Assembly: GCF_001194135.2 (NCBI RefSeq)
Contig: NC_068989.1
Span: forward strand, 33,164,094-33,228,093
Direction of reading: 5' to 3'
Length of the DNA: 64,000 bases
Source: Octopus bimaculoides
Lineage: Eukaryota
Shown here: positions 7,337 to 60,209 of the stretch, in pieces
Layout: every line of letters starts with the position of its first letter
How positions within the stretch are numbered: the stretch's first letter is position 1
Position numbers and translations under genes: made by a program
Notes under the pieces: generated by a model
Databases searched by the model: none
Told to the model about the DNA's origin: nothing
Seen by the model: only the letters and a program-made list of their open reading frames with translations

Positions 7337-8895
7337 TCTTACTATATAAAATACATTGTCTGTGTGTGTGTGTATCCTTTATGTATGGCCAAACCTCTGG
7401 ATCAATCTGTGCCGTACTTGGGGTACATGAATAATTTGACCTGAGAAATAATAATATGGTCTTGATTTATTTTTTTAATTAAAAACAAATAATATTGCTT
7501 TATATATATAATAAAAATTCACTTCTTCAAACCATTTTGTCAATGTCAACTTCCTGTGTCTGGTGTTCTGACGTAACTAAGTAACCAGCTATTTACATAC
7601 AGACGTATGTATACATCATTACAGTTGTGACAGTTTCTGATAAAAAAGAATTTCTAAAGGTACTGTCATTTTTTTATATTCTTCTCCAGCTTTCTATTTT
7701 TGTATCTGTACATACAGGTTCATTTCTGTAAAAATTTTCCCATGTTAACAGGTCTGCTTCATATATAAGATATATATTTATGTGTGTGTAAATACATTCT
7801 CCATAGAGACAGACGCATCTTTCTCATATGTCAACAGGTCTGTTAAGATATATATTAATGTGTGTGTGTGAAAATACATTCAATACGGAGATACACACCT
7901 TTTTTTTCAAATGTCAACAGGTCCGTTTCACATACATGGTATATATTATTGTGTGTGTGTGTGTGTGTGTGTGTATGCCACCTCACCACTTAACACTTAA
8001 AAAAAGGGCCCCAATCATGCTGCTCAGGAATCTGGATCCACCTTGTCTGTGCAATGGCACCAGACTGGTGGTGAAAACAATGCGACCCCATGTCCTAGAG
8101 GTAACAATTATGACTGGGAACTATACGGGTGAGGATGTCTTCATTCCACAAATCCTGTTAATCCCATATGACCTCCCCTTTAAATTTAAACAATTCCAGA
8201 TCCCAGTTTTGTTATGTCAATAAAGAAATCTCAAGGACAGTCTCTCAAGGTTGTTGGACTTCTCCTTGCTTCTCTCATGGGCAATGATATGTAGGATGTT
8301 CACAAGTCCCCAAAACCTTTTCATTTATTCACCAATTAAAGGACACACTCAAATCATTGTATATTTAGAAGCTCTACATAATTAAACTGTGATTGATTTC
8401 CGGATTTGTTTCAATACATTTGTTTATACTCACAGCATCTGGTAGAATTTTTGTTAAATGTATTTATTAATAGGAGAGGAGCACCAGGAAGGCAGTTCTT
8501 CCCAAATTTATGCATTTTCAGGTTCAACATGTTTCAAATAAGTACTGACAATTGAAGGTGATTGCAAAGACAAAGAACTACGTGCTTTTTTAGCAATTTT
8601 AACAGTGTGAACATCGGATAAAACATGTTATTGACACATACAGTTAGTACCTCAGTTAATAACTGTTGAGAACTGCATAATCCATGTTTCATTTTACTTA
8701 GAGATTTAAAAGGTATACTTAAATTTCATTATTTACAATAACCTGGGAAACACCGGGTTATTAACTTATAAAGTTGGTATCTCAGTTACTAGGAGGTGAG
8801 ACCTGCATAGTCTATGTTTCATGTTAGAGATCTAAAAGACATTTTTAAATTTCATTATTTTCTTTAACCTGAGTAATGCGAGGTATTTCTGCTAG
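7337..8895 (+). mobile_element. Non-autonomous Helitron carrying a C-terminal Pif1 helicase fragment (about 7975-8380)
   Basis: A|TC-TTACTATATAAAA 5' end. Translation [18 protein letters not shown]...FKFKQFQIPV. 3' hairpin then CTAG|T at 8892-8896. Confidence 0.8.
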
Positions 8896-8996: not shown

Positions 8997-10477
8997 TCTG
9001 TATATATATAAAAGAGATGATGTTTGTGTGTATGTGTACGTGAATGTAGTTTATGCACATCCACAAATTAGCACGCATGTTGCTCCAATTTTAGGTGATG
9101 TGTCATGACACTATGTGCATTTTCGCCAAATATTTCTCTCAGAGGCACCCGCGTATAGCTGTAAAAATCGATAGACTTTTACCAATTTTGAAGTTTGTTG
9201 ACATGGCGAAGTCAAATCTGTGCGTACACGTGTGAAGAGAGAGAGAGAGAGACAGAGAGACAGACAGACAGAGAGACAGACAGACAGAGAGACAGACAGA
9301 CAGAGAGACAGAAAGAAAGAAAGAGTGTGTTTGTGACAGGGGGGAGATACAGTGTTTGCTAGCGTCCAAAAAAAATTAAAATTAAAAAAGTGGGTAAGGT
9401 AGACAGAAATCAAAGCAAATTTTTCTAAGCAAGACAGAGTTTACTTTGCTAGCGTCTAACAAANNNNNNNNNNNNNNNNNNNNNNNNNNNNNNNNNNNNN
9501 NNNNNNNNNNNNNNNNNNNNNNNNNNNNNNNNNNNNNNNNNNNNNNNNNNNNNNNNNNNNNNNNNNNNNNNNNNNNNNNNNNNNNNNNNNNNNNNNNNNN
9601 NNNNNNNNNNNNNNNNNNNNNNNNNNNNNNNNNNNNNNNNNNNNNNNNNNNNNNNNNNNNNNNNNNNNNNNNNNNNNNNNNNNNNNNNNNNNNNNNNNNN
9701 NNNNNNNNNNNNNNNNNNNNNNNNNNNNNNNNNNNNNNNNNNNNNNNNNNNNNNNNNNNNNNNNNNNNNNNNNNNNNNNNNNNNNNNNNNNNNNNNNNNN
9801 NNNNNNNNNNNNNNNNNNNNNNNNNNNNNNNNNNNNNNNNNNNNNNNNNNNNNNNNNNNNNNNNNNNNNNNNNNNNNNNNNNNNNNNNNNNNNNNNNNNN
9901 NNNNNNNNNNNNNNNNNNNNNNNNNNNNNNNNNNNNNNNNNNNNNNNNNNNNNNNNNNNNNNNNNNNNNNNNNNNNNNNNNNNNNNNNNNNNNNNNNNNN
10001 NNNNNNNNNNNNNNNNNNNNNNNNNNNNNNNNNNNNNNNNNNNNNNNNNNNNNNNNNNNNNNNNNNNNNNNNNNNNNNNNNNNNNNNNNNNNNNNNNNNN
10101 NNNNNNNNNNNNNNNNNNNNNNNNNTTAGAGTTAACCTAGAAGGGACAGGCCCCTTATTTTTTGGTTAAGGCTGTTGGTAAGTTTTCCTAAGTTACTCCA
10201 ATTCACATCCCCAATGCAAACCTTCAGATCAACCTTTTCCTATGCAGATCTCTAATGCAACTTTAAAAAAAAACAGTCAATGAGTGGAAATAATCAATAA
10301 ACTGATTCCTTATTGGATTTCCCAATTAAATTGCCAGCAAACCATTTTTAGCCAAACCAATTTCAACAGATTTCGCTCAAATCTGATGTCCATGTTACTT
10401 ATTTTGGTTTGAAATAAAGCACTTGATCACTTAATAATCCTAGCTTAATCCCGAGCAGTGCCGGGCTACACTGCTAG
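8997..10477 (+). mobile_element. Non-autonomous Helitron-like element spanning an N gap
   Basis: A|TC-TGTATATATATAAAAG start; cccgagcagtgccggg hairpin then CTAG|T at 10474-10478; internal (GA/GACA)n. Continuity across the gap is assumed. Confidence 0.65.
9464..10125. other. Assembly gap (N); further gaps at 16334-16445, 52984-53044 and 59185-59730
   Basis: Runs of N. Confidence 1.
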
Positions 10478-11846: not shown

Positions 11847-13796
11847 CTGAAATAAATACAATATGTGTTCAAAACATTTGAAATTATGTAACAGACAAAT
11901 GATTTTATAAAGTTTTTTTTATTTTGTAATGCAAAAGCATTTTGATTGTTGTTTTTAAAACTTTATCATTATTTAGTCCAAGTTCCAAATAGAAAGTTCT
12001 AGGCAATGTTCTATGTGGTATTTGATTGGTGAGATACAGTAGAGATGACAAGACAAGAAGCAATGGGTTTGGAAATATTGGCATACTGAATTCTAATTTA
12101 GAGGAGCAAAAGCTATTGCATTAAGAAAAAGACTGAAAGGGAAAATAATAAATATTTTAGACTAATGGTTGTAATTTGTTGGGATGTGAATTTTTGCAAT
12201 TATCCAGACAGTGTTTTTTTTTAATGCATAATAGTATGGTGGTGATGATAGCAGTCAATCATCCAACCAAACTAAAGAAACTGTTTCCATTAATTTTTCA
12301 AATTGCTTATACAATCTGCCAATGACAACTCCTGACAGAAGTATCACCATTTTCCAAGGATAGGGTTAGATGTGAACAAAGAATGCAGATATGTATATAT
12401 ATATAGAAATAGCAGTAATACCAGTCGTTGAGGGGTAATTAATTTTATTCTTTCTCAGGAGCCACATTCAAAGTATTATTATATATATAATTTACTCCTC
12501 CTCTATGTGTGTATTTTATAAGAGAAAAACATGTAATAATTGAAGTAGAAAAAAGATCAGTCTCATACACAAACTTTTGTTTGTTTATTATATGACTCTA
12601 AGTGAGTTGTGTGTTATTTTATTTATCAATACATTAATGGCAATTATATAATACACTTCACTTAAAAAGGTGATTTACTCATTCTTGAATGTAATGATAG
12701 TAATGGCAAATTAAGTTATTGAAGTATTCATGTTGCATTAAGAGTGAATATTTCTTTATAAACAATGTTTTCTCTTTTATTTCAGGGTGCATAAGCAAAA
12801 AGACTTGCTTTTTGCTCCCACACATGATGCTCCTACATAAAGTTGGCCATGTGAAAAGCATGGTTCTTCAAGTTGCAATCCAACAACTTTTAGTGTTTGG
12901 CCCTGACTTTTATTAATATTCATGGCAAAAGCAACTCGGATAGGAAACTGTAACCACTTAAAGTGGAATGGGACATTAGATGGTATAACTGGTATGTGAG
13001 GAATGAAGACAGTCTTACCTTTGCCACAACCAGTGAGAATATTTGCCTCAATGCAGTTCCTCATAAATTTGTGCACAATCAGTCTTGGACCACTGCGTAA
13101 TTTTGGTTGAGACAAATTATGCAATAGCATAATAGGAGTCCCTTTCTTCAGCTGAAGACAATGAGGAACTGTACCTGGTGGTTCTAGTGATTTCAAAAAT
13201 TTGATGGGGTAGTTAACACTATCCTGATCAATAACAAAACTGTCAATTGAGTTATAAGTAAATACTTCTCCTGGAAGTTTATTCAATAGCATATTATTAA
13301 TGCTATTTACAGCAACATTTTTTGGAGCCAGGATAGGGCACTCACAGATCCAATCTGTATTGTTGTAATTATGAAGAAGATTTGGAAAGATTTCAGCCAC
13401 TAAATCATCAACAGAATCAGCTGAACTACATGTTGGACCGAGTGTAAGAAACTGTTCTTCCTCAATTGCAACTCTCTCTTCACCAAGTTTCAAAAGCTGC
13501 TCTGCAAATAGTTCAGCTGATTGATCTCTTGAAAGCCTCAATTTCATATTTGTCAAAAGTTGAAGTGTTTTCATGTGGTGCCATAATACAGAAGACTTTA
13601 TTGAAGCACTGAGCTCATCTACTTTTGTTCCTATTGGAACAACTGGTAGTGTTTGTTGAAAGTCTCCTGACAATAATACTGTGACATTTCCCATTATGGA
13701 ATTATGATTTCTAATGTCTTGTAATATTCTGTCCACAGCTTCAAAAGCTTTTTTTGTGGGCCATGATACATTCATCCTAGACAATTAGGTAGCATT

Positions 13797-14149
13797 ATCA
13801 TCATCATCATCATCATCGTCGTCATTTAATGTCCATTTTCCATGCTAGCATGGGTTGAACAGTTTAACCGGGGTCTGGGAAGCCAGGAGGCTGCACCAGG
13901 CTCCAGTCTGATCTGGTAGTGTTTCTACAGCTGGATGCCAACCAATCCATGGGTGTAGTGGGTGCTTTCTACATGCCACCGGCACAGGAGCCAGAGGAGG
14001 CTGGTAGCGGCCAGAGGAGGTTGACAGCGGCCAGAGGAGGCTGGCAGCGGCCATGATTGGTTGGTGCTTTTTACGTGCCACCGGCACAGAAGCCAGTCGA
14101 TGCGGTGCTGGCATCAGCCACGTTCGGATGGTGCTTTTTACGTACCACC
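13797..14149 (-). mobile_element. 5'-truncated RTE LINE (3'UTR only) inserted in the Helitron helicase
   Basis: (GAT)n tail, catgctagcatggaaaatggacattaaa terminus, and 66-bp repeat units. It interrupts the helicase just before the DEC motif. Confidence 0.85.
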
Positions 14150-16094
14150 AAGTTCACCCATTCCAGAATTTTTAGATATATTACAAACTGGATCTTCTTT
14201 GCTAGATAGATCTAAAGGTAACTTGAATGTTGAATGGGCAGTCCGACCTCCAGATAGTCATGTTGCTGCAATCCCAGAAGTAGCAGTAGCTAAAGCTATT
14301 TTATTTTCTTGACAAACTTTAGCCAGGAAGAGTTTAATAACAAATGTTTTCCCAGTACCTCCTGGGGCATCTAAGAAATAAAGTCCTCCTATGTTATTTT
14401 TAATACTTTCTATGACAGTAGAATATGCACAACGTTGATCAGATAGAAGGTTGAGAAAATTATCATTTATATACATGGTCAGTTTTTCCATATCATAGGA
14501 AATTTCCCTCATTATTTCAGTGGACAGACTGTTAAGACCCCTTCTATTAGTTAGTGGGAGACCTAAATTTTCTATAGGTTCACCTCCCAACGAAATAATT
14601 TGATCTTCTATTTCAATCAAAGCTGCATTGTATATAACATCAGTGAAACCAATATCTTGCTCAAGATTACTCAATTGAACTTGGTGCTTGAAATCTTCAG
14701 CAAGATCATTTCTGAACTTATTCCACAGTTCAACAGGATTACTTACTTCGCAATTTTTGAGAATAATAGCAAAATGACCTCTTAAACTCTTTGGTGTTTT
14801 TGATATTGAAGCTTCTACCAGTGTTGCTTCCCATTGCTGATCGTTTGCAAGCAAATCTAACTTCAAATATGCTTCTCAACATCTTCTGCAAATCTCACTA
14901 TCAACTTCTCTCAAAACTTTCTCATGAAGTTGGCCCACTTTTTACATGAAGAAAGCATTCATTTTCCTTAGCATGTACAGTATATATTCTACTAATTGTT
15001 GTACCCAACTTAATCCCAGAATGACCTTGAACCTTTGTACCTATTTTGCATCTATTCCATTTATTATTACTCCATGTGTAATAAGAAGGAACCTCATGAT
15101 ATGGCAATGTTTTTGCAAAATTGTTCCCCCAACAAAGATTGAAAAAGGCTGTTAAAGTGGTATCCTTTGGATTTGAAACTCAATTTGCCGCTGTTTCGGC
15201 AGTGAAGTAAACCCTTTGACCATTTTCTAAATGCACAGAAAGTTGTTAAACGGTTAGGTGCTTTTGTGGATTGCAAATCCAAATATGCGCCAGAAGGCCT
15301 CATTACTGCTTATACATCTCCCTATTTGGTATTGTTAAACTTCATCATTAGTGTTTTCTTGAATGGTGAAAGAAGTAGCATCACTGCCTTTATTTATGTA
15401 TTTGCATACATACTTTATGCTCTTTGTAGAGTTACAAGACTTTGTCATTTTCTGCTGCACTTTGAGCTGCCATTCTTTGTTGGCTATCTGCAAGTCATGC
15501 ATTTCTTTGATGTCTGATTTCAGATGTACGTCAAGCTTTCTTTCTTTGTCAATCAAATCATCTGTAAGCAGTTTGTGTCTCTTGTCTTCATTTTGTGCTG
15601 CACATCATGCGTTTCTTTGATGTTCATGGTTTGACATTCTTTTATTAGGAGACATTTTTTTGCTAAGGAATATCAGTATGTAATAGTCAAATGAAATTAC
15701 AAATGCTGTATCCTGTCACTGTAAGCGCTGAATTTCCAATGCTATATTACAGGAATGCAAGGCAAGGCGCTGTGTGATAGAGAAGTTTAACTAAGTCAGA
15801 ATGTATGTTGTTGATGTGAATTGTCTTTTTTGTGGGTGTGTTGATGATTTACGTTTCACTCTCAAGTTCTTTGTGTGTGTGTCATGCATCTCACTTCAGT
15901 CGGATTCTCTCTGCCTATCTCAAAGAAGTATGTATATTCATATCTGACCTGACAAACTAGAAAAATAGCTATATCATATAGAACAATAGCTTTAATGAAT
16001 CCAGGTGACTGTATGATGGCACTGAAAAGGCCACAGGTCAAATGGAACACCCATTTGTCACGGTTCCTTTTGATGTTTGAATAGGCCATAAGCC

Positions 16095-16691
16095 TGGTGA
16101 GAATGGATGAGGATAGCTGCCTGAAAAAGTGCCACACCCTAACAGTTGAGGGAACCCATGGAAGAGGTAGGCCCAGGAAGACCTGGGCTGAGGTGGTGAA
16201 GCAAGACCTTCGTACATTGGGCCTCACCGAGGCGATGACTACTGACCGAGACCTTTGGAAATGTGCTGTGCGTGAGAAGACCCGGCAAGCCAAGTAAGAT
16301 CGTTGCCAGTGCCCCTGGACTGGCTCTTGTGCGNNNNNNNNNNNNNNNNNNNNNNNNNNNNNNNNNNNNNNNNNNNNNNNNNNNNNNNNNNNNNNNNNNN
16401 NNNNNNNNNNNNNNNNNNNNNNNNNNNNNNNNNNNNNNNNNNNNNCATAAAAGACACCATTTCGAGCGTGGCCATTGCCAGTATCGCCTGACTGGCCTTC
16501 GTGCAGGTGACACGTAAAAGCACCTACTACACTCTCTGAGTGGTTGGCGTTAGGAAGAGCATCCAGCTGTAGAAACTCTGCCAAATTTAGATTGGAGCCT
16601 GGTGATGCCATCCGGTTTCACCAGTCCTCAGTCAAATCGTCCAACCCATGCTAGCATGGAAAGCGGACGTTAAACGATGATGATGATGATG
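16095..16691 (+). mobile_element. 5'-truncated RTE LINE (ORF end plus 3'UTR)
   Basis: GRGRPRKTWAEVVKQDLRTLGLTEAM...KTRQAK* followed by 3'UTR and (GAT)n tail; possible AAGCC TSD. Confidence 0.88.
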
Positions 16692-33099: not shown

Positions 33100-33915
33100 T
33101 CTCACTTTAGAGAAGTTCAGTGAAAACAATGTTATTGTTGTAGACATCGGCAAAGCCTTGCAAGCATATCCAGAGACTAACTTTCCCCAGTCATGCATCA
33201 TCCATACAACCTAGACACCACATACAAAGCCTGCATTGATTCCATGCACAGAAATCTTGAGAGCGTCTACAGCAGAGCCATGCCAACCTAGTCTCTTTTA
33301 ACATCAAAATAGCTCAAGCACTACCAATAAACACTACTAAGAAAACATCACCACACACTCCTAAACATGAGTGGCACTTAACTAGAGCTCTCTTACCTGA
33401 CAAAAGCACATCCCAAAGACTGACCCTTTTTCTTCAGAGATAGAAAATGTATTAGGCCTCAACAGCTGCCAACACTCTACCAGGTTCAAATTAAGATTCA
33501 CAAATAAGTAATACTCCCACATCTAGAACAGTGCTGCTATTACACACACCAACATCCTGGACATGAATTCAGAGAAAAGCCACTCGACTGATTGGCATTT
33601 AATTACTAATGGATATGCTCAAGACTCAGACTACAGAAGTGCTGTCTCCATTGTCTTTTATATTGCCATTATAATGGCCTCTATTCCTCAGAGTTGACTA
33701 TCTTATACCTCCACCACTCACACCCCAACCAGCTCATCTCCCTATTATCACACTTGTTGTGTCCACCTGACATTGACCACTATGTTCAGTCCTTCCTCCC
33801 CAGAACATCAACCCTTTAGGATGTTCTCCCTGCTAATGTCTTTCTTGCCGGTATTGATCTCCAGCAATTTAAATGGAACATTAATAGCATCAAGTTCAAT
33901 GGTCTCAGATGTCAT
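33100..33915 (+). mobile_element. Decayed Jockey/CR1-like LINE RT fragment
   Basis: VIVVDIGKALQ (DISKAFD-like), NILDM.QRKATRLIG, HYVQSFLPRTSTL, DLQQFKWNIN. Confidence 0.7.
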
Positions 33916-36050: not shown

Positions 36051-37828
36051 ATTTGCTTAAAATATTGTACTGTAGTACAAATCAAGCAAACAATTGTAAT
36101 TATCACCATAAGTATAGAAACAGATATATTAAAACATTAAGAAGCTACATATGAATTGCTAGATAAAACAAAATGCTAGAATACAGTATCTTATGAACTG
36201 TAGCAAAAGATATATTAAAAAAAAACAAGAAAAAAAGAAAGCATTATAAAATTAACATAGGCACAGGTGTGGTTGTGTGGTAAGAAGTTTACTTCCCAAC
36301 CAGTTTCAGGTTCAGTCCCACTGCATAGCATCTTAGGCAAGTGTCTTCTACTATAGCCTTGGGCAAACCAAAGCCTTGTGAAAAGCTTTGATAGACGAAA
36401 ACTGAAAGAAGCCCATTGTGTACAGGATGTCCTAGAAAGATTTACCCATGTTTAAAACTCTTCCTAACGAATATCAGTTCAGGCCTCAGCAGCTGCTGAC
36501 ACTCTACCATGCTTACATTAGATTCACAAATGAGTAATACTCCCACATCTAGAACAATGCTGCTACTACACACACCAACATCCTGGACATGAATTCAGAG
36601 AAAAGCCACTCGACTGATTGGCATTTAATTACTAATGGATATGCTCAAGACTCAGACTACAGAAGTGCTGTCTCCATTGTCTTTTATATTGCCATTATAA
36701 TGGCCTCTATTCCTCAGAGTTGACTATCTTATACCTCCACCACTCACACCCCAACCAGCTCATCTCCCTATTATCACACTTGTTGTGTCCACCTGACATT
36801 GACCACTATGTTCAGTCCTTCCTCCCCAGAACATCAACCCTTTAGGATGTTCTCCCTGCTAATGTCTTTCTTGCCGGTATTGATCTCCAGCAATTTAAAT
36901 GGAACATTAATAGCATCAAGTTCAATGGTCTCAGAGAGACTTCAAATATTATCTACATTCTACATAAAGATTTGTATATGTCTTTTGTTCATGAATCTAT
37001 TGTTTCATTCATTCGTAATAGGTTTGTAAACAAACATAGCATCAAAAGCAAAGCATGACCAGATTGTCGCTTTGAAAACAGCTGGAGTGAGCAAAAAGGA
37101 TATAACAAAACAGTTGAATGTGTGCCGTAAAACAGTGTTCAATACCTGGAAACGATATATGGAGCCTGCTACTTCCTCTAACAATCCAATTCTTGGTAGG
37201 AAACAATCAATTCATACCAAACAAACAGTTACAGTTGTGGAGTAAATGAACTGAAATACCTACAGGAGTGCAAGAAAAACTGCAAAAGCTCTTGCTATTT
37301 CGAAATTGTCAACGCACAGGATTTTTAAAGAGGATTCAAAGCCAATTGCATACAAGAAACAATTCTGGCAGTTAATTTCAGCAGCTTCCAAGAAGAAACA
37401 GCTAGATAGGGGTGAAACCATGTTAGCTAAGATGAAGTGCACTGCTAACAAAGTGTTAATTTGGTCCAATGAGAAGATCCTCACCATGGAAGCAGTTACC
37501 AACAGGCAGAATGATAGGCTTTATACATGTAATGCAGGAGACTTGCTCGAAAGTAGCAGGAGTCATTTACACCAACAGAAACCAGCTTCACTCATGGTAT
37601 GGGCCACAGCTGCAAAGATAGGTCCAAGTCTCCTTTGATCTTCATCAATGCTGGCATCAAGGTCAACAGCAAAGTTTATGTGGAAATGTTGAATGAGAAA
37701 GTGTTATTCTAGGTCAGAGAAACCTTTGGTGACCGTTACATCTTCACTCAAAACAGGGCTCCGGCCCACACATCCAATTTGACACAGGGGTAGTGCAAAG
37801 AGTATTTCAATGGACTTTGCTATCTGGT

Positions 37829-40725
37829 TCATCATCATCATCATCATCATCATCGTCATTTAACGTCCACTTTCCATGCTGGCATGGATTGGACGGTTTG
37901 ACTGAGGGCTGGCAAGCCACAAGGCTGTACCAGGCTCCAATCTGATCTGACAAAGTTTCTACAGCTAGATGCCCTCCCTAATGCCAACTACTCCAGGAGT
38001 GTAGTGGGTACTTTTTACATGCCACAGGCATGAAAGCCAGTCAGGCAGTACTGGCATCAACCATGCTTGAATGGTACATTTTACATGCCACCAGCATGGA
38101 GCCAGTCAGGTGAAACTGGCAATGATCATGTTTGAATGGTGCTTTTTATATGCCACCGGCACTGGAGCCAGTCAGTCGGAACTGGCATCAACCATGCTCG
38201 AATGGTGCTTTTTACATGCCACAAGCACAGGAGCCAGTCAAGTGACACTGGCAACAATCACGCTCAAATGGTGCTTTTTACATGCCAATCAGGCTGCACT
38301 GGCATTGACCACGCTCAATTGGTGCTTTTTATGTGCCACTGGCACAGGTGCCAATCAGGCGGTACTGTCATCAGCCATGACAATGACTTCACCAGGTCTT
38401 CACAAGCGCAGTTTACTGCTCAATGATTGAAGGGTACTCTTAAATGGACCGATTATGCTGCACAGGCATAAGCCATGGTTACGGTCTCACTTGGCTTGCC
38501 AGATCTTCTCAAGCACTGCATATCTCCAAAGGTTTTAGTCACTTGTCGTCACCTCTGTGAGGCCCAACATTCAACGGCCATGCTTCACCACCTCATCCCA
38601 GGTCTTCCTGGGTCTACCTCTTCCACAGGTTCCCTCTACTGCTACGGTGTGACACATTTTCACACAACTGTCCTCATCCATATGCCCATACCAGTGCAGT
38701 CGTCTCTCTTGCACACCACATCTGATGCTTCTTATGCCCAACTTTTCTCTCAGGGCACTTACACTCTGTTGTGTATGCACACTGACCTTACACATCCAGC
38801 GGAGCATACTAGCTTCATTCCTTGCAAACTTACACAAAGCCTCAGCAGTCATGGCCCATGTTTCACAGTCATGTAGCAAAACTGTTCGCACACATGCGTC
38901 ATAAAGTCTACCTTTTTCTCAGAGTGAGAGGCACTTTGTCACCAGCAGAGGTAGGAGCTCTCTGAACTTTGCCCAGGCTATTCTTATTCTAGCATCTACA
39001 CTTGTGGGAGAATTCACCCCGACTACTGACTTGGTCACCTAGGTAACAGAAGCTATCAACTACTTCTAGCTTTTCCCCCTGGCATGTGATGGAAGCTGTT
39101 TTCTGCATATTTTCGGTGTTTATTGCCCCTGAGCATTTGCCACACACAAAAACTATCTTCCCAGTTAGCCTTCCTTTGATATTGCTGCACCTCTTATGTG
39201 TACCTCTTATGGGTACATCTTATGGAGTTTCTATGCCTTTTCTACAGATCGAGCAAGGCCATCTACCTGAAGGCATTTGTAATTTGTTTGCCTTCCTACT
39301 TATTAAGACTTTGGTTTTTTTCTAGATTGACTCTAAGGCCCTTTGATTCTAGACCTTGCTTCCACACCTGAAACTTCTCTAGTTCTGCTAGTGACTCAGC
39401 TATTAAAGCAATGTCATCAGCATAGAGGAGCTCCCAGGGGCATCCTGTCTTGAATTCTTCTGTTACTGCCTGGAGGACTATGATGAATAAGAGGGGGCTG
39501 AGGACTGATCCTTGGTGGACCCCTACCTAGAATTCTTCACTATACTCGTTGCCAGCCCTCACCTTACTGACAGCATCCTTGTACATGGCTTGTACAGCTC
39601 TCATGACCACCAGATAAGGGAACGAGGGACTTGTCAAAAGCTTTCTCCATGTCAATGAATACCATGTACAAAGGTTCATCTTTGGCTAGGTATTTCTCCT
39701 GCAGCTGTCTTACCAGAAATATAGCATCAGTGGTGCTTTTCCCTGGCACAAACCCAAACTGCATCTCATCTAAACTAACTCTCTCTCTACTTAGTTGGGC
39801 TATGACATTCTCCGTGACTTTCATTACCTGATCCAACAACTTGATATCTCTGTAATTATTCATATCTAATGCATCACCTTTACCTTTGTAGCAGTTGACT
39901 ATGGTGCTGCTACACCAGTCATAGAGTATGACTCCTTCATGTATCACCTGATTGACTATACAGGTGACTAGACTATAGCCAACACCGACAGATATTTTAA
40001 GCATTTCTGCAGTGATTCTTGGTGGGCTGGGAGCCTCCTCTGTCTTCATACCCTTAATTGCTTTATCTACCAAGGTACAGTCAATTTGGATAGCTGGTCC
40101 CTCTGTTGGGTCGACATTCAGCAGACTCTCTTTCTCCCATTCATTCTCTTCATTTAGCAACCTTTCATAGTGGCGTCTCCAAGTCTCTCTCTTTGCAGCC
40201 TTGTCTAGTGCAAGTGAACCATAATCCATGCAGACACATTTCTCTCCTATGACATCATGATTCTCTCTCACACGCTGTCTTGCAACATGAAACACTTCAA
40301 GTATTTGCTCCTCACGGCACAGAACATTAACAAATTTTTTTTCTTATCTGCTTCCCCTCTGGCTAAGTAAACCTGGCTCCTAGCCTCCCTTCCGGCAATC
40401 TGATATAATTCCCTGCTACCACCGTTCTTCCAGTCCTTCCATGCCTGTTTCTTTTCCCTAATGGCCCTGTCAACTACATTGTTCCACCACCACGTTACCT
40501 TGGGTCGAGAGGGGCCTTTGCACCATCCACAGATCTGGTCAGTAGCCCTCAACAGGTTATCTCGTAGGAACCTCCTGTTGTCTTCCACATCATGTGATGC
40601 TATGTCCCTTTCTATTTCATCAAAAGCTTTGAGTAATACGTCTCTAAATCTCTGAGAGTAATGTTTCTGCTTACTCCTATTTAAATGTGTCAGATCTGAA
40701 GAAAGCCTGTGTGTTTTCATGTGTC
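37829..40725 (-). mobile_element. 5'-truncated RTE-clade LINE (most of the RT, 3'UTR with 66-bp tandem array, (GAT)n tail)
   Basis: NYRDIKLL, FGFVPGKSTTDAIF, DMEKAFD, GVHQGSVLSPLLF, LLYADD, GRGRPRKTW; frameshifted. Confidence 0.93.
38008..38390. repeat. Tandem array of about six 66-bp units in the RTE 3'UTR
   Basis: Unit ggtgctttttacatgccaccggcacaggagccagtcaggcggcactggcatcaaccacgctcgaat (approximate consensus). Confidence 0.85.
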
Positions 40726-41468: not shown

Positions 41469-41636
<168 letters not shown>

Positions 41637-47391: not shown

Positions 47392-48690
47392 AAGCCTAGT
47401 AAGAAGGGAGACAAAAAATGAAAAATTGAGCAATTAACTGGCAACTGATTAAAATACGAATGTAGATTGTCAATGAAATTATGAATGTGAATGATTTATG
47501 TGTGTGTAAATTTTATTTTTTAATTGAAATACAAAAACAATATAAAAATATTTAATATAATTAGACGAAAACTATGAAATTCCTTGCAGTGTCATTGATA
47601 ATTTTTTTCCTTACCTCAATGATGCTGGTGGCATATATAAAAAGTCCACTTAGAATAAAAAAGTATGGAATAATATTATCACCCTCAAATTAGAGAAACA
47701 AATACTAATAACTTTTTCTTTTAGAACTTCATTGCATGAGATTGATACCATGAAATTCCTCGAATTGAGCTCTACCATTTAAGCTTAATTAAAATATCGG
47801 TTGTTTTTAAAATATAAAAGTTATTTATACTTGAATCCAATTTTTTTGCCTTACTTATATTTTTTTCGTGATATTTTACATCACAACTTTTTTTATACAA
47901 ATTTTTGTTGTAGGGGACAAAAACTATGAAAATCTTCATGCTTTCTTTTATCATTAAAGCTAAGATAAATATATTTTTCTTTTAAAATAAAAAGATATTT
48001 AGATCTAAACTTGACTAGTGGCGTTACTTACTCTCCTATAATGTTGCTACAAATTTTGACATAAACCTTTTTCAGCTTGACCAAATCTCAATTTTTTTAA
48101 TGCCAAAATGTAGCTAGGGACCAGTCCTCTTCAAAAATGTTAAAATTACAGCCTTAAGAATATTATTCAACTACTACCATAGTAGAATGATTAGTTGAAC
48201 AGGAGCTGAATGTTTAAATACTATGCTAAACTACTGACAACCATTGAAAAATGAAAGACAAAACCTGGTAACAAAAAATAAAATTAACATAGGACCCAAG
48301 TTTACTAATTGTAATTTACTACTAAATTTAACTAAATAATCATAACAAGCATAATTTGTTTCTCCCTAAGTTCAAGGCAAATTTTTCTGAAAAGTAAGGT
48401 ATAAACTGCTTTTACTTAGTTTATCAAGAACTTTGGATTAATACAAAACATATTATTAAACAAATAAGGATACATCTAATATACTCCTTTTATTTTGTTA
48501 TATAATTTAAAGAAATATTTAATCTGGAATGTATTTTGTATTATTAGAAAATATATCGAGAAAATATTGTTTCTACGTAACTAATGTGTGTAAACATACC
48601 ATGAAGTATATAATATGCTAAATAGAGCCTTACCTGCATACTAAAAAAAAAGAAGTAATAATTAAATAAGTAATAATTGTTGAAGGATAT

Positions 48691-48809
48691 GAAAACCGAT
48701 CATTCCATATTGACCTGGCAACTTGTCCACAGGTTATCACTCCACGTACTGTCTCTAACAGGATTTGCCAGGTAGCATTAAAGTCAACCTTCCTTGGCTT
48801 CAGTGACAT
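48691..48809 (-). CDS. CUL2: Cullin-2, first coding exon (119 nt; MSLKPRKVDFNATWQILLETVRGVITCGQVARSIWNDRFS)
   Basis: Translation matches the CUL2 N-terminus as I recall it (human MSLKPRVVDFDETW...WNDRFS). ATG at 48809, preceded by a pyrimidine tract and TTCAG acceptor (exon start about 48825, short 5'UTR). The exon ends at an ATATCCTT U12 donor. Confidence 0.96.
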
Positions 48810-49269
48810 CCTGATGTATTTATAACTGAAGATAAAAAGAAAAAACAAAGCTTCAATTATAACTATAAAGACATCATTAAAAATGAGGAATTTATATGAA
48901 ATTCAACAGATGTTGGTGAGTCAACTTCACAACCAGTTTTCAATTACAAACACTAAAATAAGTTTTGTTGTTAATGCCCTAAACAAAAGTATGAATACAA
49001 TGCATAATTATTTTCCTTTTAGTAAAGATACTGTGGACTACATAAATGGATGAGCAGAATCTTTAAAGCATTGAACAGTGTGCCTTGTATTTGTTTCAAT
49101 TTTTTATGTTCTGAATTCAAATCCTTATCAATCCTTCCAAGATTCATAAGATAAATTACTAGTCAAGAACAGGGATTGATATGATCAACTAAACCACTCA
49201 CCCAAATTTCTAGCTTTGTGCCTAAATAAGAAATTATTAGTAATATCATTAATCTTACTGTGATTCCAC

Positions 49270-52983: not shown

Positions 52984-53044
52984 NNNNNNNNNNNNNNNNN
53001 NNNNNNNNNNNNNNNNNNNNNNNNNNNNNNNNNNNNNNNNNNNN

Positions 53045-53077: not shown

Positions 53078-53915
53078 TGGACGGTTTGACTGAGGACTGG
53101 CAACCCAGAAGGCTGCGCCAGGCTCCAATCTGATCTGGCAAAGTTTCTACAGCTGCATGCCCTTCCTAACTCCAACCACTCCAAGAGTGTAGTGGGTGCT
53201 TTTACGTGCCACCAGCACGAGGGCCAGTCAGGCAGTACTGGCAACAACCACACTCAAATGGTGTTTTTTACATGCCACCTGCACAGGTGCCAGTCAGGTG
53301 GCACTGGCAACGACCACGCTTGAATGTTGTTTTTCACATGCCACCCGCACAGGGGCCAGTAAGGCGATGCTGGCAATGATCACACTCAAATGGTGGTTTT
53401 TACATACCACTGGCACAGGTGCCAGTTAGTGGCCCTGGCAACGATTACACTCAGATGGTGCTTTTAACGTCCCACTGGCACGGGTGCCAATCAGGTGGTA
53501 CTGCCATCGGCCACATCAGTGATTTTGATTTCACTTGCCTCAACAGGTCTTCGGAAGAAAAGTTTATTGTCCAATGAATGAAGGGTACTCATACGTGGGC
53601 TGGTTATACACCACGGGCATAGGCCACGGGTTATGGTCTCGCTTGGCTTGCCAGGTCTTCTCAAGCACAGTATATCTCCAAAGGTCTTGGTCATTAGTTA
53701 TTGCCTCGGTGAGGAAGGTCGTGCTTCACCACCTCATCCCAGGTCTTCCTGGGTCTACCTCTTCCACGGGTTCCCTCAACTGCTAGGGTGTGACACTTTT
53801 ACACACAGCTGTCCTCATCCATTTGCAACACATGACCATACCAGTGCAGTTGTCTCTCTTGCACACCACAGCTGGTGCTTCTTAAATCCAACTTTTCTCT
53901 CAGGGCGCTTATACT
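53045..53915 (-). mobile_element. 5'-truncated RTE LINE (ORF end, 3'UTR repeats, (GAT)n tail)
   Basis: Same terminus and 66-bp repeats as the other copies. Confidence 0.87.
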
Positions 53916-53924
53916 GTCATGTAT

Positions 53925-53969
<45 letters not shown>

Positions 53970-53974
<5 letters not shown>

Positions 53975-54610
53975 TTAACTCTTTGGATCCTGGAATGCCA
54001 TCTCACAAACTGACATTGAAGAAGAAAGGTGTTCCCATCATACTTTTGAGAAATCTGGATCCTCCAAAGCTGTGCAATGGAACAAGACTGATTGTCAGGC
54101 AAATGCACCCACATCTTTTGGAAGTAACAATCCACACTGCACAAGGAAATGGAGAAAATGTGTTTATTCCAAGAATTCTACTGATTCCAGTAGACATACC
54201 CTTTAAATTCAAGAAACTTCAATTTCCTGTAAGAGTTAGTTTTGCAAAGTCAATTAACAAGAGCCAAAGATAATTACTGAAAACTGTTGGACTTCACCTC
54301 ATGCAGCAGTGCTTTTTCCCATGGTCAGTTCTATGTTGGTTGTTCCAGAGTTGGAAATGGGAACAATCTCTTCATACTCACACCAAATGATAAAGCCCAA
54401 AATATTGTTTAACCTGCTAGTTTACAGTGATCTTCAAATGTCACAGTGGCACAAAATTCTCCAAATGTGATACTCTGTGATATAAATCTGAGAAGGTAGA
54501 ATACTAATAAATGCTTTATTATTATTTCCATTTAGTTTTGGGCTGCAGGCCCAAGTAGCCCTCTGCAGGAGGTGGCTTAAAAGTCTACACAGAGTGTAGC
54601 TTTTAAGATA

Positions 54611-59184: not shown

Positions 59185-60209
59185 NNNNNNNNNNNNNNNN
59201 NNNNNNNNNNNNNNNNNNNNNNNNNNNNNNNNNNNNNNNNNNNNNNNNNNNNNNNNNNNNNNNNNNNNNNNNNNNNNNNNNNNNNNNNNNNNNNNNNNNN
59301 NNNNNNNNNNNNNNNNNNNNNNNNNNNNNNNNNNNNNNNNNNNNNNNNNNNNNNNNNNNNNNNNNNNNNNNNNNNNNNNNNNNNNNNNNNNNNNNNNNNN
59401 NNNNNNNNNNNNNNNNNNNNNNNNNNNNNNNNNNNNNNNNNNNNNNNNNNNNNNNNNNNNNNNNNNNNNNNNNNNNNNNNNNNNNNNNNNNNNNNNNNNN
59501 NNNNNNNNNNNNNNNNNNNNNNNNNNNNNNNNNNNNNNNNNNNNNNNNNNNNNNNNNNNNNNNNNNNNNNNNNNNNNNNNNNNNNNNNNNNNNNNNNNNN
59601 NNNNNNNNNNNNNNNNNNNNNNNNNNNNNNNNNNNNNNNNNNNNNNNNNNNNNNNNNNNNNNNNNNNNNNNNNNNNNNNNNNNNNNNNNNNNNNNNNNNN
59701 NNNNNNNNNNNNNNNNNNNNNNNNNNNNNNTGATGAACAAAAGAATACAGGTTACTTCACAGTTTTTCTGTATTTGATTGAGAAACCAGTGGTCTACCGT
59801 TGAGTTAAATGTTTTTAAGAGATAAACTTTGAAAGCTGCATTCCCTCGCTTTCAGTAAATATGTTGCTTATTCTTTTTGGTAGTTTTTGACTTATTTAGT
59901 CCCTCGAAGCGTGAGGCATTAATACACAGTTAATGCCCTTTATATATAAGTATTTATATTTATGATGAAATGATGAATTTTTTCATTACGAAAATTTTTC
60001 GTTATTTTTTCATTTTGAGGTTTTTTTCACGCTACTTGATAAATTCTTATAAAGAATTTATCCTATATTATATTATATATATATACATATATATATATAT
60101 ATGTATGTATTCTTATATGTACATATATATATACATATATACACATATACATATATATATACACATACATATATATACACATATATATATACGTATACAT
60201 ACATGTATA

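What the first reader, a model, noticed from the sequence alone, without database searches (positions are those of the whole stretch)
48628..48690. Strong in-phase U2 donor, and a possible 7-nt microexon, nested just inside the U12 5' splice site (twintron-like)
Seen in sequence: 57 nt into the AT-AC intron is CAG|GTAAGG. The 57-nt extension is stop-free and keeps the exon phase (adds YPSTIITYLIITSFFLVC). Directly upstream is CTTC-T9-AG, which would define a 7-nt TATGCAG unit between a U2 acceptor and this donor. Established: U2-within-U12 twintrons exist (Drosophila prospero), and cryptic U2 sites are used when minor splicing is limiting. Inference: competing spliceosomes could switch CUL2 between productive and NMD or start-less isoforms. 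The nearest upstream AG at the 3' end (22 nt before the exon) would give a frameshift with a TAA.
Basis: partly seen in the sequence, partly recalled or inferred. Interest (0 to 1): 0.7.

Follow-up and report, generated by a model that had tools for sequence, protein, structure and literature searches.

The report
Latent U2 splice sites in CUL2 minor intron
Just inside the ancient minor-spliceosome (AT-AC) intron of the octopus CUL2 gene sits an unusually strong pair of ordinary splice signals flanking 7 bases. They are real and statistically odd, but nothing available here shows that the cell uses them, and their reading-frame fit is a coincidence.

Summary
The window is Octopus bimaculoides CUL2, on the minus strand. 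The ATG exon ends at 48691. A textbook AT-AC U12 intron follows (48690-41599: ATATCCTTC ... TTCCTTAAC-N8-AC).

Fifty-seven nt into the intron lies CAG|GTAAGG, preceded by CTTC-T9-AG and the 7 nt TATGCAG. The donor outscores 14 of 18 real CUL2 donors. It is the only strong acceptor-plus-donor pair in 94 kb of CUL2 introns.

Evidence against a conserved function:
- O. sinensis keeps the block at +55, so the phase is lost, and its conservation is no better than the rest of the intron.
- Argonauta keeps only a weaker GTAAG at +115, with 2 nt instead of 7.
- Sepia and about 20 non-cephalopod orthologues of this conserved minor intron have nothing comparable.
- The only nearby U2 acceptor at the 3' end (AAG, -22) is weaker than every real acceptor in the gene.

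New here: an all-GT-AG route is in frame. It runs from a weak exon-internal donor to T9-AG, through the 7-nt exon and GTAAGG, to the -22 AG. It is exactly the deposited O. vulgaris CUL2 model. That model came from EVidenceModeler, which cannot represent AT-AC introns.

The most likely reading is a latent cryptic U2 site pair. Regulated use is possible but unproven.

The parts
48691..48825 (-). CUL2 ATG exon. The acceptor AG is at 48827-48826. The CDS is 48809-48691 and encodes MSLKPRKVDFNATWQILLETVRGVITCGQVARSIWNDRF+S(TC).
   Evidence: identical to O. bimaculoides CUL2 protein P0033
41599..48690 (-). U12-type AT-AC intron of CUL2, 7092 nt. It is orthologous to the known minor intron of human and mouse CUL2.
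48682..48690 (-). U12 5' splice site ATATCCTTC
   Evidence: RTATCCTT follows WNDRFS in all 29 orthologous loci that were fetched
48641..48655 (-). Pseudo-acceptor CTTC-T9-AG. It has 15 of 17 pyrimidines and T at -3, which is stronger than 15 of 18 real CUL2 acceptors.
48634..48640 (-). 7-nt unit TATGCAG (candidate microexon)
   Evidence: used in O. vulgaris model CAI9728248.1
48628..48633 (-). U2-type donor GTAAGG in the context CAG|GTAAGG. It matches the U1 consensus at 8 of 9 positions and scores 7.64 on the PWM.
48744..48752 (-). Weak exon-internal GT site ACA|GTACGT (PWM 0.2). It is needed for the in-frame all-GT-AG bypass. It is 109 nt upstream of the T9-AG.
41621..41622 (-). Nearest U2-type AG before the 3' end (-22), in the context CCATTCTGAAG|ACT. 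It has only 8 of 17 pyrimidines and A at -3.
41608..41616 (-). U12 branch-point sequence TTCCTTAAC, with the branch A about 10 nt from the 3' splice site
41599..41600 (-). U12 3' terminal AC
41496..41598 (-). Next CUL2 coding exon, (S)[34 protein letters not shown], with donor AAG|GTAAGA
48466..48473 (-). Second U12-5'ss-like motif GTATCCTT at intron position +218. It is also kept in O. sinensis. Significance unknown.

Best explanation
The block is a latent (cryptic) U2-type splice-site pair: a strong polypyrimidine-AG acceptor, 7 nt, and a near-consensus donor. It lies inside an ancient, canonical AT-AC U12 intron of Octopus bimaculoides CUL2.

Productive CUL2 mRNA is made by U11/U12 recognition of ATATCCTTC and TTCCTTAAC-N8-AC.

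The nested donor can persist because it does not compete for the same machinery and has no competent partner:
- The only AG near the 3' end (-22) has a poor pyrimidine tract and A at -3.
- The 7-nt unit is too short for ordinary exon definition.
- The 7-nt unit can be entered only from a very weak exon-internal GT.

Inference: if U1 engages the site, for example when minor splicing is limiting, the expected product joins 48634 to 41620. That product reads ...VCRLFLN*, which is a premature stop in an early exon, so it should be degraded by nonsense-mediated decay (NMD).

The in-phase, stop-free look of the 57 nt is coincidental.

What is shown: the anatomy, site strengths, rarity, phylogenetic distribution and predicted products. 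What is inferred: silence in vivo and the NMD fate.
For: U12 signals are consensus and positionally conserved from coral-like to vertebrate-like orthologues. CUL2 is a listed human and mouse minor-intron gene.

The canonical junction gives the conserved protein, which aligns residue for residue with solved human CUL2. The cluster that holds the O. bimaculoides and O. sinensis RefSeq proteins contains only the canonical form for those species.

Site strengths:
- Donor 7.64, but the partner AAG(-22) has 8 of 17 pyrimidines, below all 18 real acceptors.
- The exon-internal donor scores 0.2.

Conservation:
- Phase is lost in O. sinensis (+55).
- Octopus-Octopus identity of the first 136 nt (92.6%) equals that of the last 1 kb (92.1%).
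- Argonauta has a weaker GTAAG at +115 and a 2-nt unit. Sepia has none.
- No donor of at least 5.5 lies in the first 100 nt in 22 other orthologues.
- Intron-end conservation of this intron is not exceptional among the 19 introns.

EVM forbids AT-AC introns, which explains the O. vulgaris model.
Against: The site pair is much rarer than chance:
- Only 3 decoys of at least 7.6 in 94 kb.
- It is the only strong acceptor-donor pair in all CUL2 introns, and it lies in the first 57 nt of the only U12 intron.

The first ~60 nt are homologous in Argonauta, and GGTAAG aligns with GGTAAG. The alignment score is above all 2554 random Argonauta intron segments. So the donor may predate the Octopus-Argonauta split.

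Some evidence track fed to EVM contained the 7-nt exon. If that track was RNA-based, the sites are used.

No RNA-seq could be examined.
Confidence: 0.6

Rival explanations
1. Functional twintron-like switch. U1/U2 use of the +57 donor with the -22 AG competes with U11/U12 splicing. It diverts a regulated fraction of CUL2 pre-mRNA into a transcript with a premature stop that is degraded by NMD. This would couple CUL2 output to minor-spliceosome activity. It is the first reader's main idea.
For: - The donor is near-consensus and statistically exceptional in position.
- A GTAAG and the CTGAAG block near the 3' end are both retained in Argonauta.
- Nested U2/U12 arrangements with unproductive isoforms are documented. 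The paralogue CUL4A is among the 18 human twintrons (PMC8329584).
Against: - The 3' partner is weaker than any real acceptor.
- Neither distance nor phase is conserved, and the site is absent in Sepia and all non-cephalopods.
- Conservation between the Octopus species is at neutral level.
- No such isoform is in the cluster that holds the O. bimaculoides and O. sinensis RefSeq CUL2 proteins.
Confidence: 0.15
2. A real in-frame all-U2 bypass isoform. The route is ACA|GTACGT (48750/48749), then T9-AG, then the 7-nt microexon TATGCAG, then GTAAGG, then AAG(-22). The product is a 727-aa CUL2 in which VRGVITCGQVARSIWNDRFS is replaced by [10 protein letters not shown].
For: - The route is in frame (-59 +7 +22 = -30 nt) in both Octopus species.
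- It equals the deposited O. vulgaris protein CAI9728248.1 residue for residue.
- That annotation used Iso-Seq and RNA-seq among its inputs.
- The middle acceptor and donor are both strong.
Against: - The route needs the weakest donor (0.2) and the weakest acceptor in the gene.
- EVM cannot output AT-AC introns, so a GT-AG workaround is what is expected.
- In Argonauta the equivalent route has a 2-nt exon and runs straight into a TGA codon (read by hand from the sequence).
- It deletes a stretch of the first cullin repeat that is conserved from octopus to human.
- The cluster that holds the two species' RefSeq proteins has no such isoform for them.
Confidence: 0.12
3. A U1-binding element that is not a splice donor. 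U1 would be docked just inside a long (7.1 kb), AT-rich intron whose own 5' splice site binds U11 rather than U1. There it could suppress premature cleavage and polyadenylation, or assist recognition of the neighbouring exon.
For: - 8 of 9 positions are complementary to U1.
- The intron is long and 31.5% GC.
- This is the only intron in the gene that lacks a U1-bound 5' splice site.
- The mechanism itself is proposed from general knowledge of U1 telescripting. It was not tested here.
Against: - Sepia (2.7 kb intron) and the other orthologues have no such site.
- The upstream 5'-UTR intron (implied by the acceptor before the ATG exon) would already supply a U1 site.
- It does not explain the adjacent T9-AG.
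Confidence: 0.06
4. Pure coincidence with no consequence at all, not even cryptic use. Alternatively, an early step in U12-to-U2 intron conversion.
For:
- AT-rich sequence with a T-run that varies between species, T9 against T8.
- Conversion through a nearby cryptic U2 5' splice site is a recognised route (PMC3584512).
Against: - Joint rarity of the acceptor and donor.
- Conversion would also need a usable AG and pyrimidine tract at the 3' end, which is lacking.
Confidence: 0.07

Closest known systems
Minor (U12-type) intron of vertebrate CUL2, listed in the minor-intron sets of Olthof et al. 2019 (PMC6717393)
   Same: Same position, after ...WNDRFS with the Ser codon split TC|N. Same RTATCCTT 5' splice site and a CCTTAA-type branch site. 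Similar length: 8.1 kb in human, 7.1 kb here.
   Different: Cephalopods use the AT-AC subtype and vertebrates GT-AG. The vertebrate-like orthologue L021 has no strong U2 donor in the first 3 kb examined.
U2/U12 twintrons: Drosophila prospero and dUrp, and the 18 human cases including CUL4A (PMC3564746, PMC3584512, PMC8329584)
   Same: Two sets of splice signals for two spliceosomes occupy one intron position. In many known cases the U2 variant is truncated or subject to NMD.
   Different: Known twintrons are defined by transcripts from both routes and by conservation of both site sets. Here no transcript evidence is available, the 3' U2 site is very weak, and conservation is limited to octopods.
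Cryptic U2-type splice sites activated near U12 introns when minor splicing is impaired (SNRNPE, EDC4, SLC9A8, LKB1 and others; PMC8329584)
   Same: A U2-type donor lies within or near a minor intron and is silent in normal annotation. Its predicted product is frameshifted.
   Different: Cryptic sites are usually weaker than authentic ones. This one is stronger than most authentic donors of the same gene and comes with a matching acceptor 7 nt upstream.
Recursive splice (ratchet) sites and zero-length or micro exons
   Same: A pyrimidine tract followed by YAG|GTAAG: CTTCT9AGTATGCAG|GTAAGG.
   Different: It lies 57 nt from the intron start and behind an AT-type U12 donor, so it cannot subdivide the intron. 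The strict motif search found no match in the window, this site included, so the motif fit is by eye only.
Mis-annotation of AT-AC introns by GT-AG-only gene builders (EVidenceModeler; PMC2395244)
   Same: The O. vulgaris CUL2 model replaces the AT-AC intron with two GT-AG introns and a 7-nt exon, using exactly these sites.
   Different: It is not established which evidence track supplied the 7-nt exon.

Membership tests
U12-type intron, AT-AC subtype | 5' splice site |ATATCCTT directly at the exon end | tested here: met
   ATATCCTTC at 48690-48682
U12-type intron, AT-AC subtype | Branch site TCCTTAAC about 10-15 nt from the 3' splice site, no pyrimidine tract, terminal AC | tested here: met
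   TTCCTTAAC at 41616-41608 and AC at 41600-41599
U12-type intron, AT-AC subtype | Orthology to a recognised minor intron | tested here: met
   Same codon position in 29 loci from diverse animals. Human and mouse CUL2 are listed as minor-intron genes with CTC|GTATCCTTT.
U12-type intron, AT-AC subtype | Removal depends on U11/U12/U4atac/U6atac | not testable with these tools
   Needs knock-down or in vitro splicing.
U2/U12 twintron | A U2-type 5' and 3' splice-site set at the same intron position | tested here: inconclusive
   The donor is strong (7.64). The only proximal AG (-22) has 8 of 17 pyrimidines and A at -3, weaker than all real acceptors.
U2/U12 twintron | Transcripts from both spliceosomes observed | not testable with these tools
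   No octopus RNA-seq is reachable. The cluster with the two species' RefSeq proteins holds only the canonical form for them. Exact look-ups of hypothetical products were empty but uninformative.
U2/U12 twintron | Both site sets conserved across the lineage | tested here: not met
   +57 in O. bimaculoides, +55 in O. sinensis, a weaker site at +115 in Argonauta, none in Sepia or in 22 other orthologues.
Cassette microexon | Flanked by a competent 3' and 5' splice site | tested here: met
   Acceptor 15 of 17 pyrimidines and donor 7.64. It is the only such pair in 94 kb of introns.
Cassette microexon | Length and sequence conserved in related species, and frame-preserving | tested here: not met
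   7 nt is not a multiple of 3. It is identical in O. sinensis only. Argonauta has 2 nt and Sepia has none.
Cassette microexon | Inclusion seen in mRNA | tested here: inconclusive
   It is present in the O. vulgaris model CAI9728248.1. That model was built by EVM, which disallows AT-AC introns.
Recursive splice site | Pyrimidine tract-YAG|GTAAG, deep in a long U2-type intron, used from an upstream GT donor | tested here: not met
   The motif resembles the site by eye, but it is 57 nt from an AT-type U12 donor. The strict motif search matched nothing in the window.
U11 snRNP-binding splicing enhancer (USSE) | Closely spaced tandem U12 5'ss motifs downstream of a U2 3' splice site | tested here: not met
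   The second RTATCCTT is 217 nt away and lies downstream of the block, not adjacent to it.

The most novel reading that the evidence does not exclude
Octopods have evolved a U2-spliceosome route through the ancient CUL2 minor intron. It is built around a 7-nt microexon placed 50 nt behind the U12 5' splice site. Depending on which sites pair, it yields either an NMD target or an in-frame CUL2 with a rewritten first cullin repeat. That would make CUL2 output a read-out of the balance between the two spliceosomes. It would be a cephalopod twintron with a microexon, caught part-way along the U12-to-U2 conversion path.
Probability: 0.12. Interest if true: 0.6.

Novelty: new member of a known kind. 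Interest (0 to 1): 0.27.

Why it matters
If the sites are used, this would be a lophotrochozoan example of competition between the two spliceosomes on one intron. I know of none reported. It would sit in a gene whose minor intron is conserved from coral-like sequences to humans, and it would show how a U12 intron can acquire a U2 bypass.

If the sites are not used, the practical lesson is about annotation. GT-AG-only gene builders turn AT-AC introns into false micro-exon models. The O. vulgaris CUL2 protein in the databases then probably carries a wrong 10-residue segment in place of 20 conserved residues.

Tried and rejected
1. A protein search with the 59-aa read-through ORF found only non-cephalopod read-through ORFs. 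None shared the extension. It was useful only for showing that the U12 site is ancient.

2. The first protein search missed all full-length CUL2. A chimeric full-length query was needed to reach Octopus, Argonauta and Sepia.

3. A metagenome pattern scan gave 19 more orthologous junctions but no cephalopods.

4. The Octopus-Sepia similarity downstream of GTAAGG (18 of 22 positions) looked promising but is not significant against shuffles, p about 0.35. Rejected.

5. Excess conservation of the last ~45 nt in Argonauta was rejected, because other introns score as high.

6. The first 200 nt are not a repeat or transposon copy.

7. There are no Rfam hits in the window. Local RNA folding is unremarkable, z = -0.85.

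8. Exact look-ups of eight hypothetical isoform and read-through peptides found nothing. This is uninformative, because even the plain genomic read-through ORFs of these species are not on record.

9. The reading 'U12 donor spliced to the T9-AG' was rejected. It would be a 50-nt AT-AG hybrid intron, and it gives ...RFSMQTIP*.

10. A single GT-AG intron that keeps the frame exists only through a GAG acceptor 34 nt inside the next exon. With the strong donor, this works only in O. sinensis.

Full report
**What is there.** The finding lies on the minus strand in the gene for cullin-2. A tblastn search with human CUL2 placed ten coding exons in the window. The window is 100% identical to Octopus bimaculoides chromosome CM046609.1 (GCA_001194135.2). 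Its exons encode the O. bimaculoides CUL2 protein exactly.

The ATG exon runs from 48825 to 48691, with the CDS starting at 48809, and ends ...TGG AAT GAT CGG TTT TC. The next 7092 nt (48690-41599) are a textbook AT-AC U12-type intron. It has the 5' splice site ATATCCTTC, the branch site TTCCTTAAC (41616-41608), 8 further nt and a terminal AC. Mapping all four available cephalopod CUL2 genes showed 19 introns each. This is the only AT-AC intron; the rest are GT-AG.

**The observation.**
- Intron positions 1-57 are 48690-48634.
- CAG|GTAAGG follows, with the GT at 48633-48632.
- CTTC-T9-AG (48655-48641) precedes the 7 nt TATGCAG (48640-48634).
- The extension is open and in phase, reading (S)YPSTIITYLIITSFFLVC.
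- The nearest AG before the 3' end is at -22. Joining the +57 donor to it gives ...VCRLFLN*.

**Is it more than chance?** I scored donors with a position weight matrix, using the same matrix throughout.
- The 18 real GT donors of O. bimaculoides CUL2 average 5.6 (range 1.4-8.9).
- The candidate scores 7.64, above 14 of the 18.
- In 94,388 nt of CUL2 introns only three decoys reach 7.6.
- In the first 120 nt of the other 18 introns the best decoy scores 2.96.
- The T9-AG acceptor has 15 of 17 pyrimidines, better than 15 of 18 real acceptors.
- A strong acceptor followed within 60 nt by a donor of at least 5.5 occurs once in all 19 introns, and it is this block.

The 'in-phase, stop-free' property is not unusual: 33% of 57-nt intronic windows are open, and one third of those would be in phase, which gives about 11%.

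**The intron is ancient and known.** Read-through ORFs and a degenerate pattern scan recovered the same junction...WNDRFS|RTATCCTT, in 29 loci. These include coral-like, vertebrate-like and other invertebrate sequences, and the intron is either AT-AC or GT-AG. CUL2 is listed as a minor-intron gene in human and mouse, with CTC|GTATCCTTT. None of the 22 distinct non-cephalopod orthologues has a U2 donor of at least 5.5 in the first 100 nt.

**Cephalopod comparison.** A chimeric full-length query reached the CUL2 proteins of O. bimaculoides, O. sinensis, O. vulgaris, Argonauta hians and Sepia (Acanthosepion) pharaonis. I could fetch four of the genes.
- **O. sinensis** keeps T8-AG-TATGCAG|GTAAGG, but at +55, so the phase is lost. 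The first 136 nt are 92.6% identical between the two species. Other alignable parts of the intron are 83-92% identical, so there is no excess conservation.
- **Argonauta** has a 534-nt intron that BLAST cannot align to Octopus. Its first ~60 nt are nevertheless homologous once a ~61-nt tandem duplication is allowed for. The global alignment score is 9, above all 2554 random Argonauta intron segments. In that alignment GGTAAG aligns with GGTAAG. The Argonauta site is weaker (GTG|GTAAGC, 4.37), lies at +115 and is out of phase. Its preceding AG leaves a 2-nt 'unit' behind a poor pyrimidine tract.
- **Sepia** has nothing comparable in the first 120 nt (best score -3.2). A GTAAGG at +307 with an 18-of-22 downstream match is not significant against shuffles.
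- Conservation at the ends of this intron between Octopus and Argonauta falls within the range of the other 18 introns.

**A new point: an in-frame all-GT-AG bypass, and a database model that uses it.** The O. vulgaris protein CAI9728248.1 reads ...[20 protein letters not shown]... where all other cephalopods read ...LLET-VRGVITCGQVARSIWNDRFS-DVYALC.... That peptide is exactly what the following route produces:
- a donor inside the exon, ACA|GTACGT (GT at 48749);
- spliced to the T-tract AG;
- the 7-nt exon TATGCAG;
- the GTAAGG donor;
- the -22 AG.

The net change is -59 +7 +22 = -30 nt, so the route is in frame. Apart from a 17-residue N-terminal extension, the O. vulgaris protein equals O. 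sinensis CUL2 with that swap.

The O. vulgaris annotation was built with EVidenceModeler from Augustus, GeneMark, Spaln and PASA inputs. The EVM paper states that AT-AC introns are disallowed. A GT-AG workaround is therefore expected.

The route also needs the weakest donor (0.2) and the weakest acceptor (8 of 17 pyrimidines, A at -3) in the gene. It removes 20 residues of the first cullin repeat that align residue for residue with solved human CUL2. The cluster that holds the O. bimaculoides and O. sinensis RefSeq proteins contains only the canonical protein for those species. I could not determine whether an RNA-based or an ab initio track supplied the 7-nt exon.

**Most likely mechanism (about 0.6).** The block is a latent U2 site pair that is tolerated inside a U12 intron. 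It does not compete for U11/U12 and has no competent U2 partner at the 3' end. Productive mRNA comes from U12 splicing. If U1 engages, for instance when minor splicing is limiting, the predicted product joins 48634 to 41620. It carries a premature stop after five codons and should be degraded by NMD (inference). The literature documents such cryptic U2 activation near minor introns (PMC8329584; PMC3584512).

**Rival explanations.**
- A regulated twintron-like NMD switch (0.15).
- A real in-frame microexon isoform (0.12).
- A U1 docking element without splicing (0.06).
- Pure coincidence, or an early step in U12-to-U2 conversion (0.07).

**Comparison with known systems.**
- The intron itself is a member of the known CUL2 minor-intron family.
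- The nested sites resemble twintrons (prospero, dUrp, 18 human genes including CUL4A). They fail, or cannot be tested on, the defining points of dual transcripts and conserved dual site sets.
- The motif looks by eye like a recursive splice site, but it is in the wrong place and behind an AT donor. A strict motif search matched nothing in the window.
- It is not a USSE.

**Verdict.** The functional interpretation is unproven, and several of its supports (phase, conservation) fall away. Interest is modest. The decisive data are junction counts in existing octopus RNA-seq and Iso-Seq, which these tools cannot reach.

Noticed in passing
O. vulgaris protein P0154 (CAI9728248.1) against window 48750-48628 and 41622-41598: The deposited O. 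vulgaris CUL2 model replaces the AT-AC intron with two GT-AG introns and a 7-nt exon. It also adds a 17-aa N-terminal extension. It is probably an annotation artefact of an EVM-based pipeline. Other AT-AC genes in that annotation may be affected in the same way.
   Followed up: partly
window 48466-48473 (-), and the whole window: A second U12-5'ss-like GTATCCTT lies 217 nt into the same intron and is kept in O. sinensis. RTATCCTT occurs 15 times in the window against 5.8 expected (0 of 100 shuffles reach 15). This is unexplained.
   Followed up: partly
window 12777-14866 (-), 53875-54273 (+), 7828-8223 (+): PIF1-like helicase ORFs and fragments (Pfam PIF1, Pif1_2B). They look like Helitron-type transposon remnants, inside and upstream of CUL2.
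   Followed up: partly
window 39564-40720 (-): A reverse-transcriptase ORF (RVT_1) in the GC-rich patch at 38-40 kb (GC 0.46), inside the intron after the second coding exon. It is a retroelement insertion.
   Followed up: partly
window ~33454-33909 and ~36481-36935: Two copies of a 456-nt element, 97.6% identical, inside a CUL2 intron.
   Followed up: no
window 9464-10125, 16334-16445, 52984-53044, 59185-59730: Runs of N (assembly gaps or masked stretches), 1381 bases in all.
   Followed up: no
L032 (Argonauta hians) 1126-1245 and 2379-2484: Two tandem duplications. One of ~61 nt lies right after the U12 5' splice site. One of 84 nt copies the acceptor and the first 21 nt of the third coding exon. 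My exon mapper first read the second as a false AT-AC mini-intron.
   Followed up: partly
P0158 / L033 (Sepia pharaonis CUL2): The deposited 802-aa model has a non-homologous C-terminal tail of about 85 aa. This suggests a missed last intron.
   Followed up: no
L001-L029: The CUL2 minor intron switches subtype among animals. It is AT-AC in cephalopods, L001-L004, L007 and L014, and GT-AG in the vertebrate-like L021, the coral-like loci and others. In L010 it appears to be only ~77 nt long.
   Followed up: partly
L031 (O. sinensis) intron +55 and 34 nt into the next exon: In O. sinensis the strong donor could pair in frame with a GAG acceptor 34 nt inside the next exon. This is not possible in O. 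bimaculoides, where the donor is at +57.
   Followed up: no
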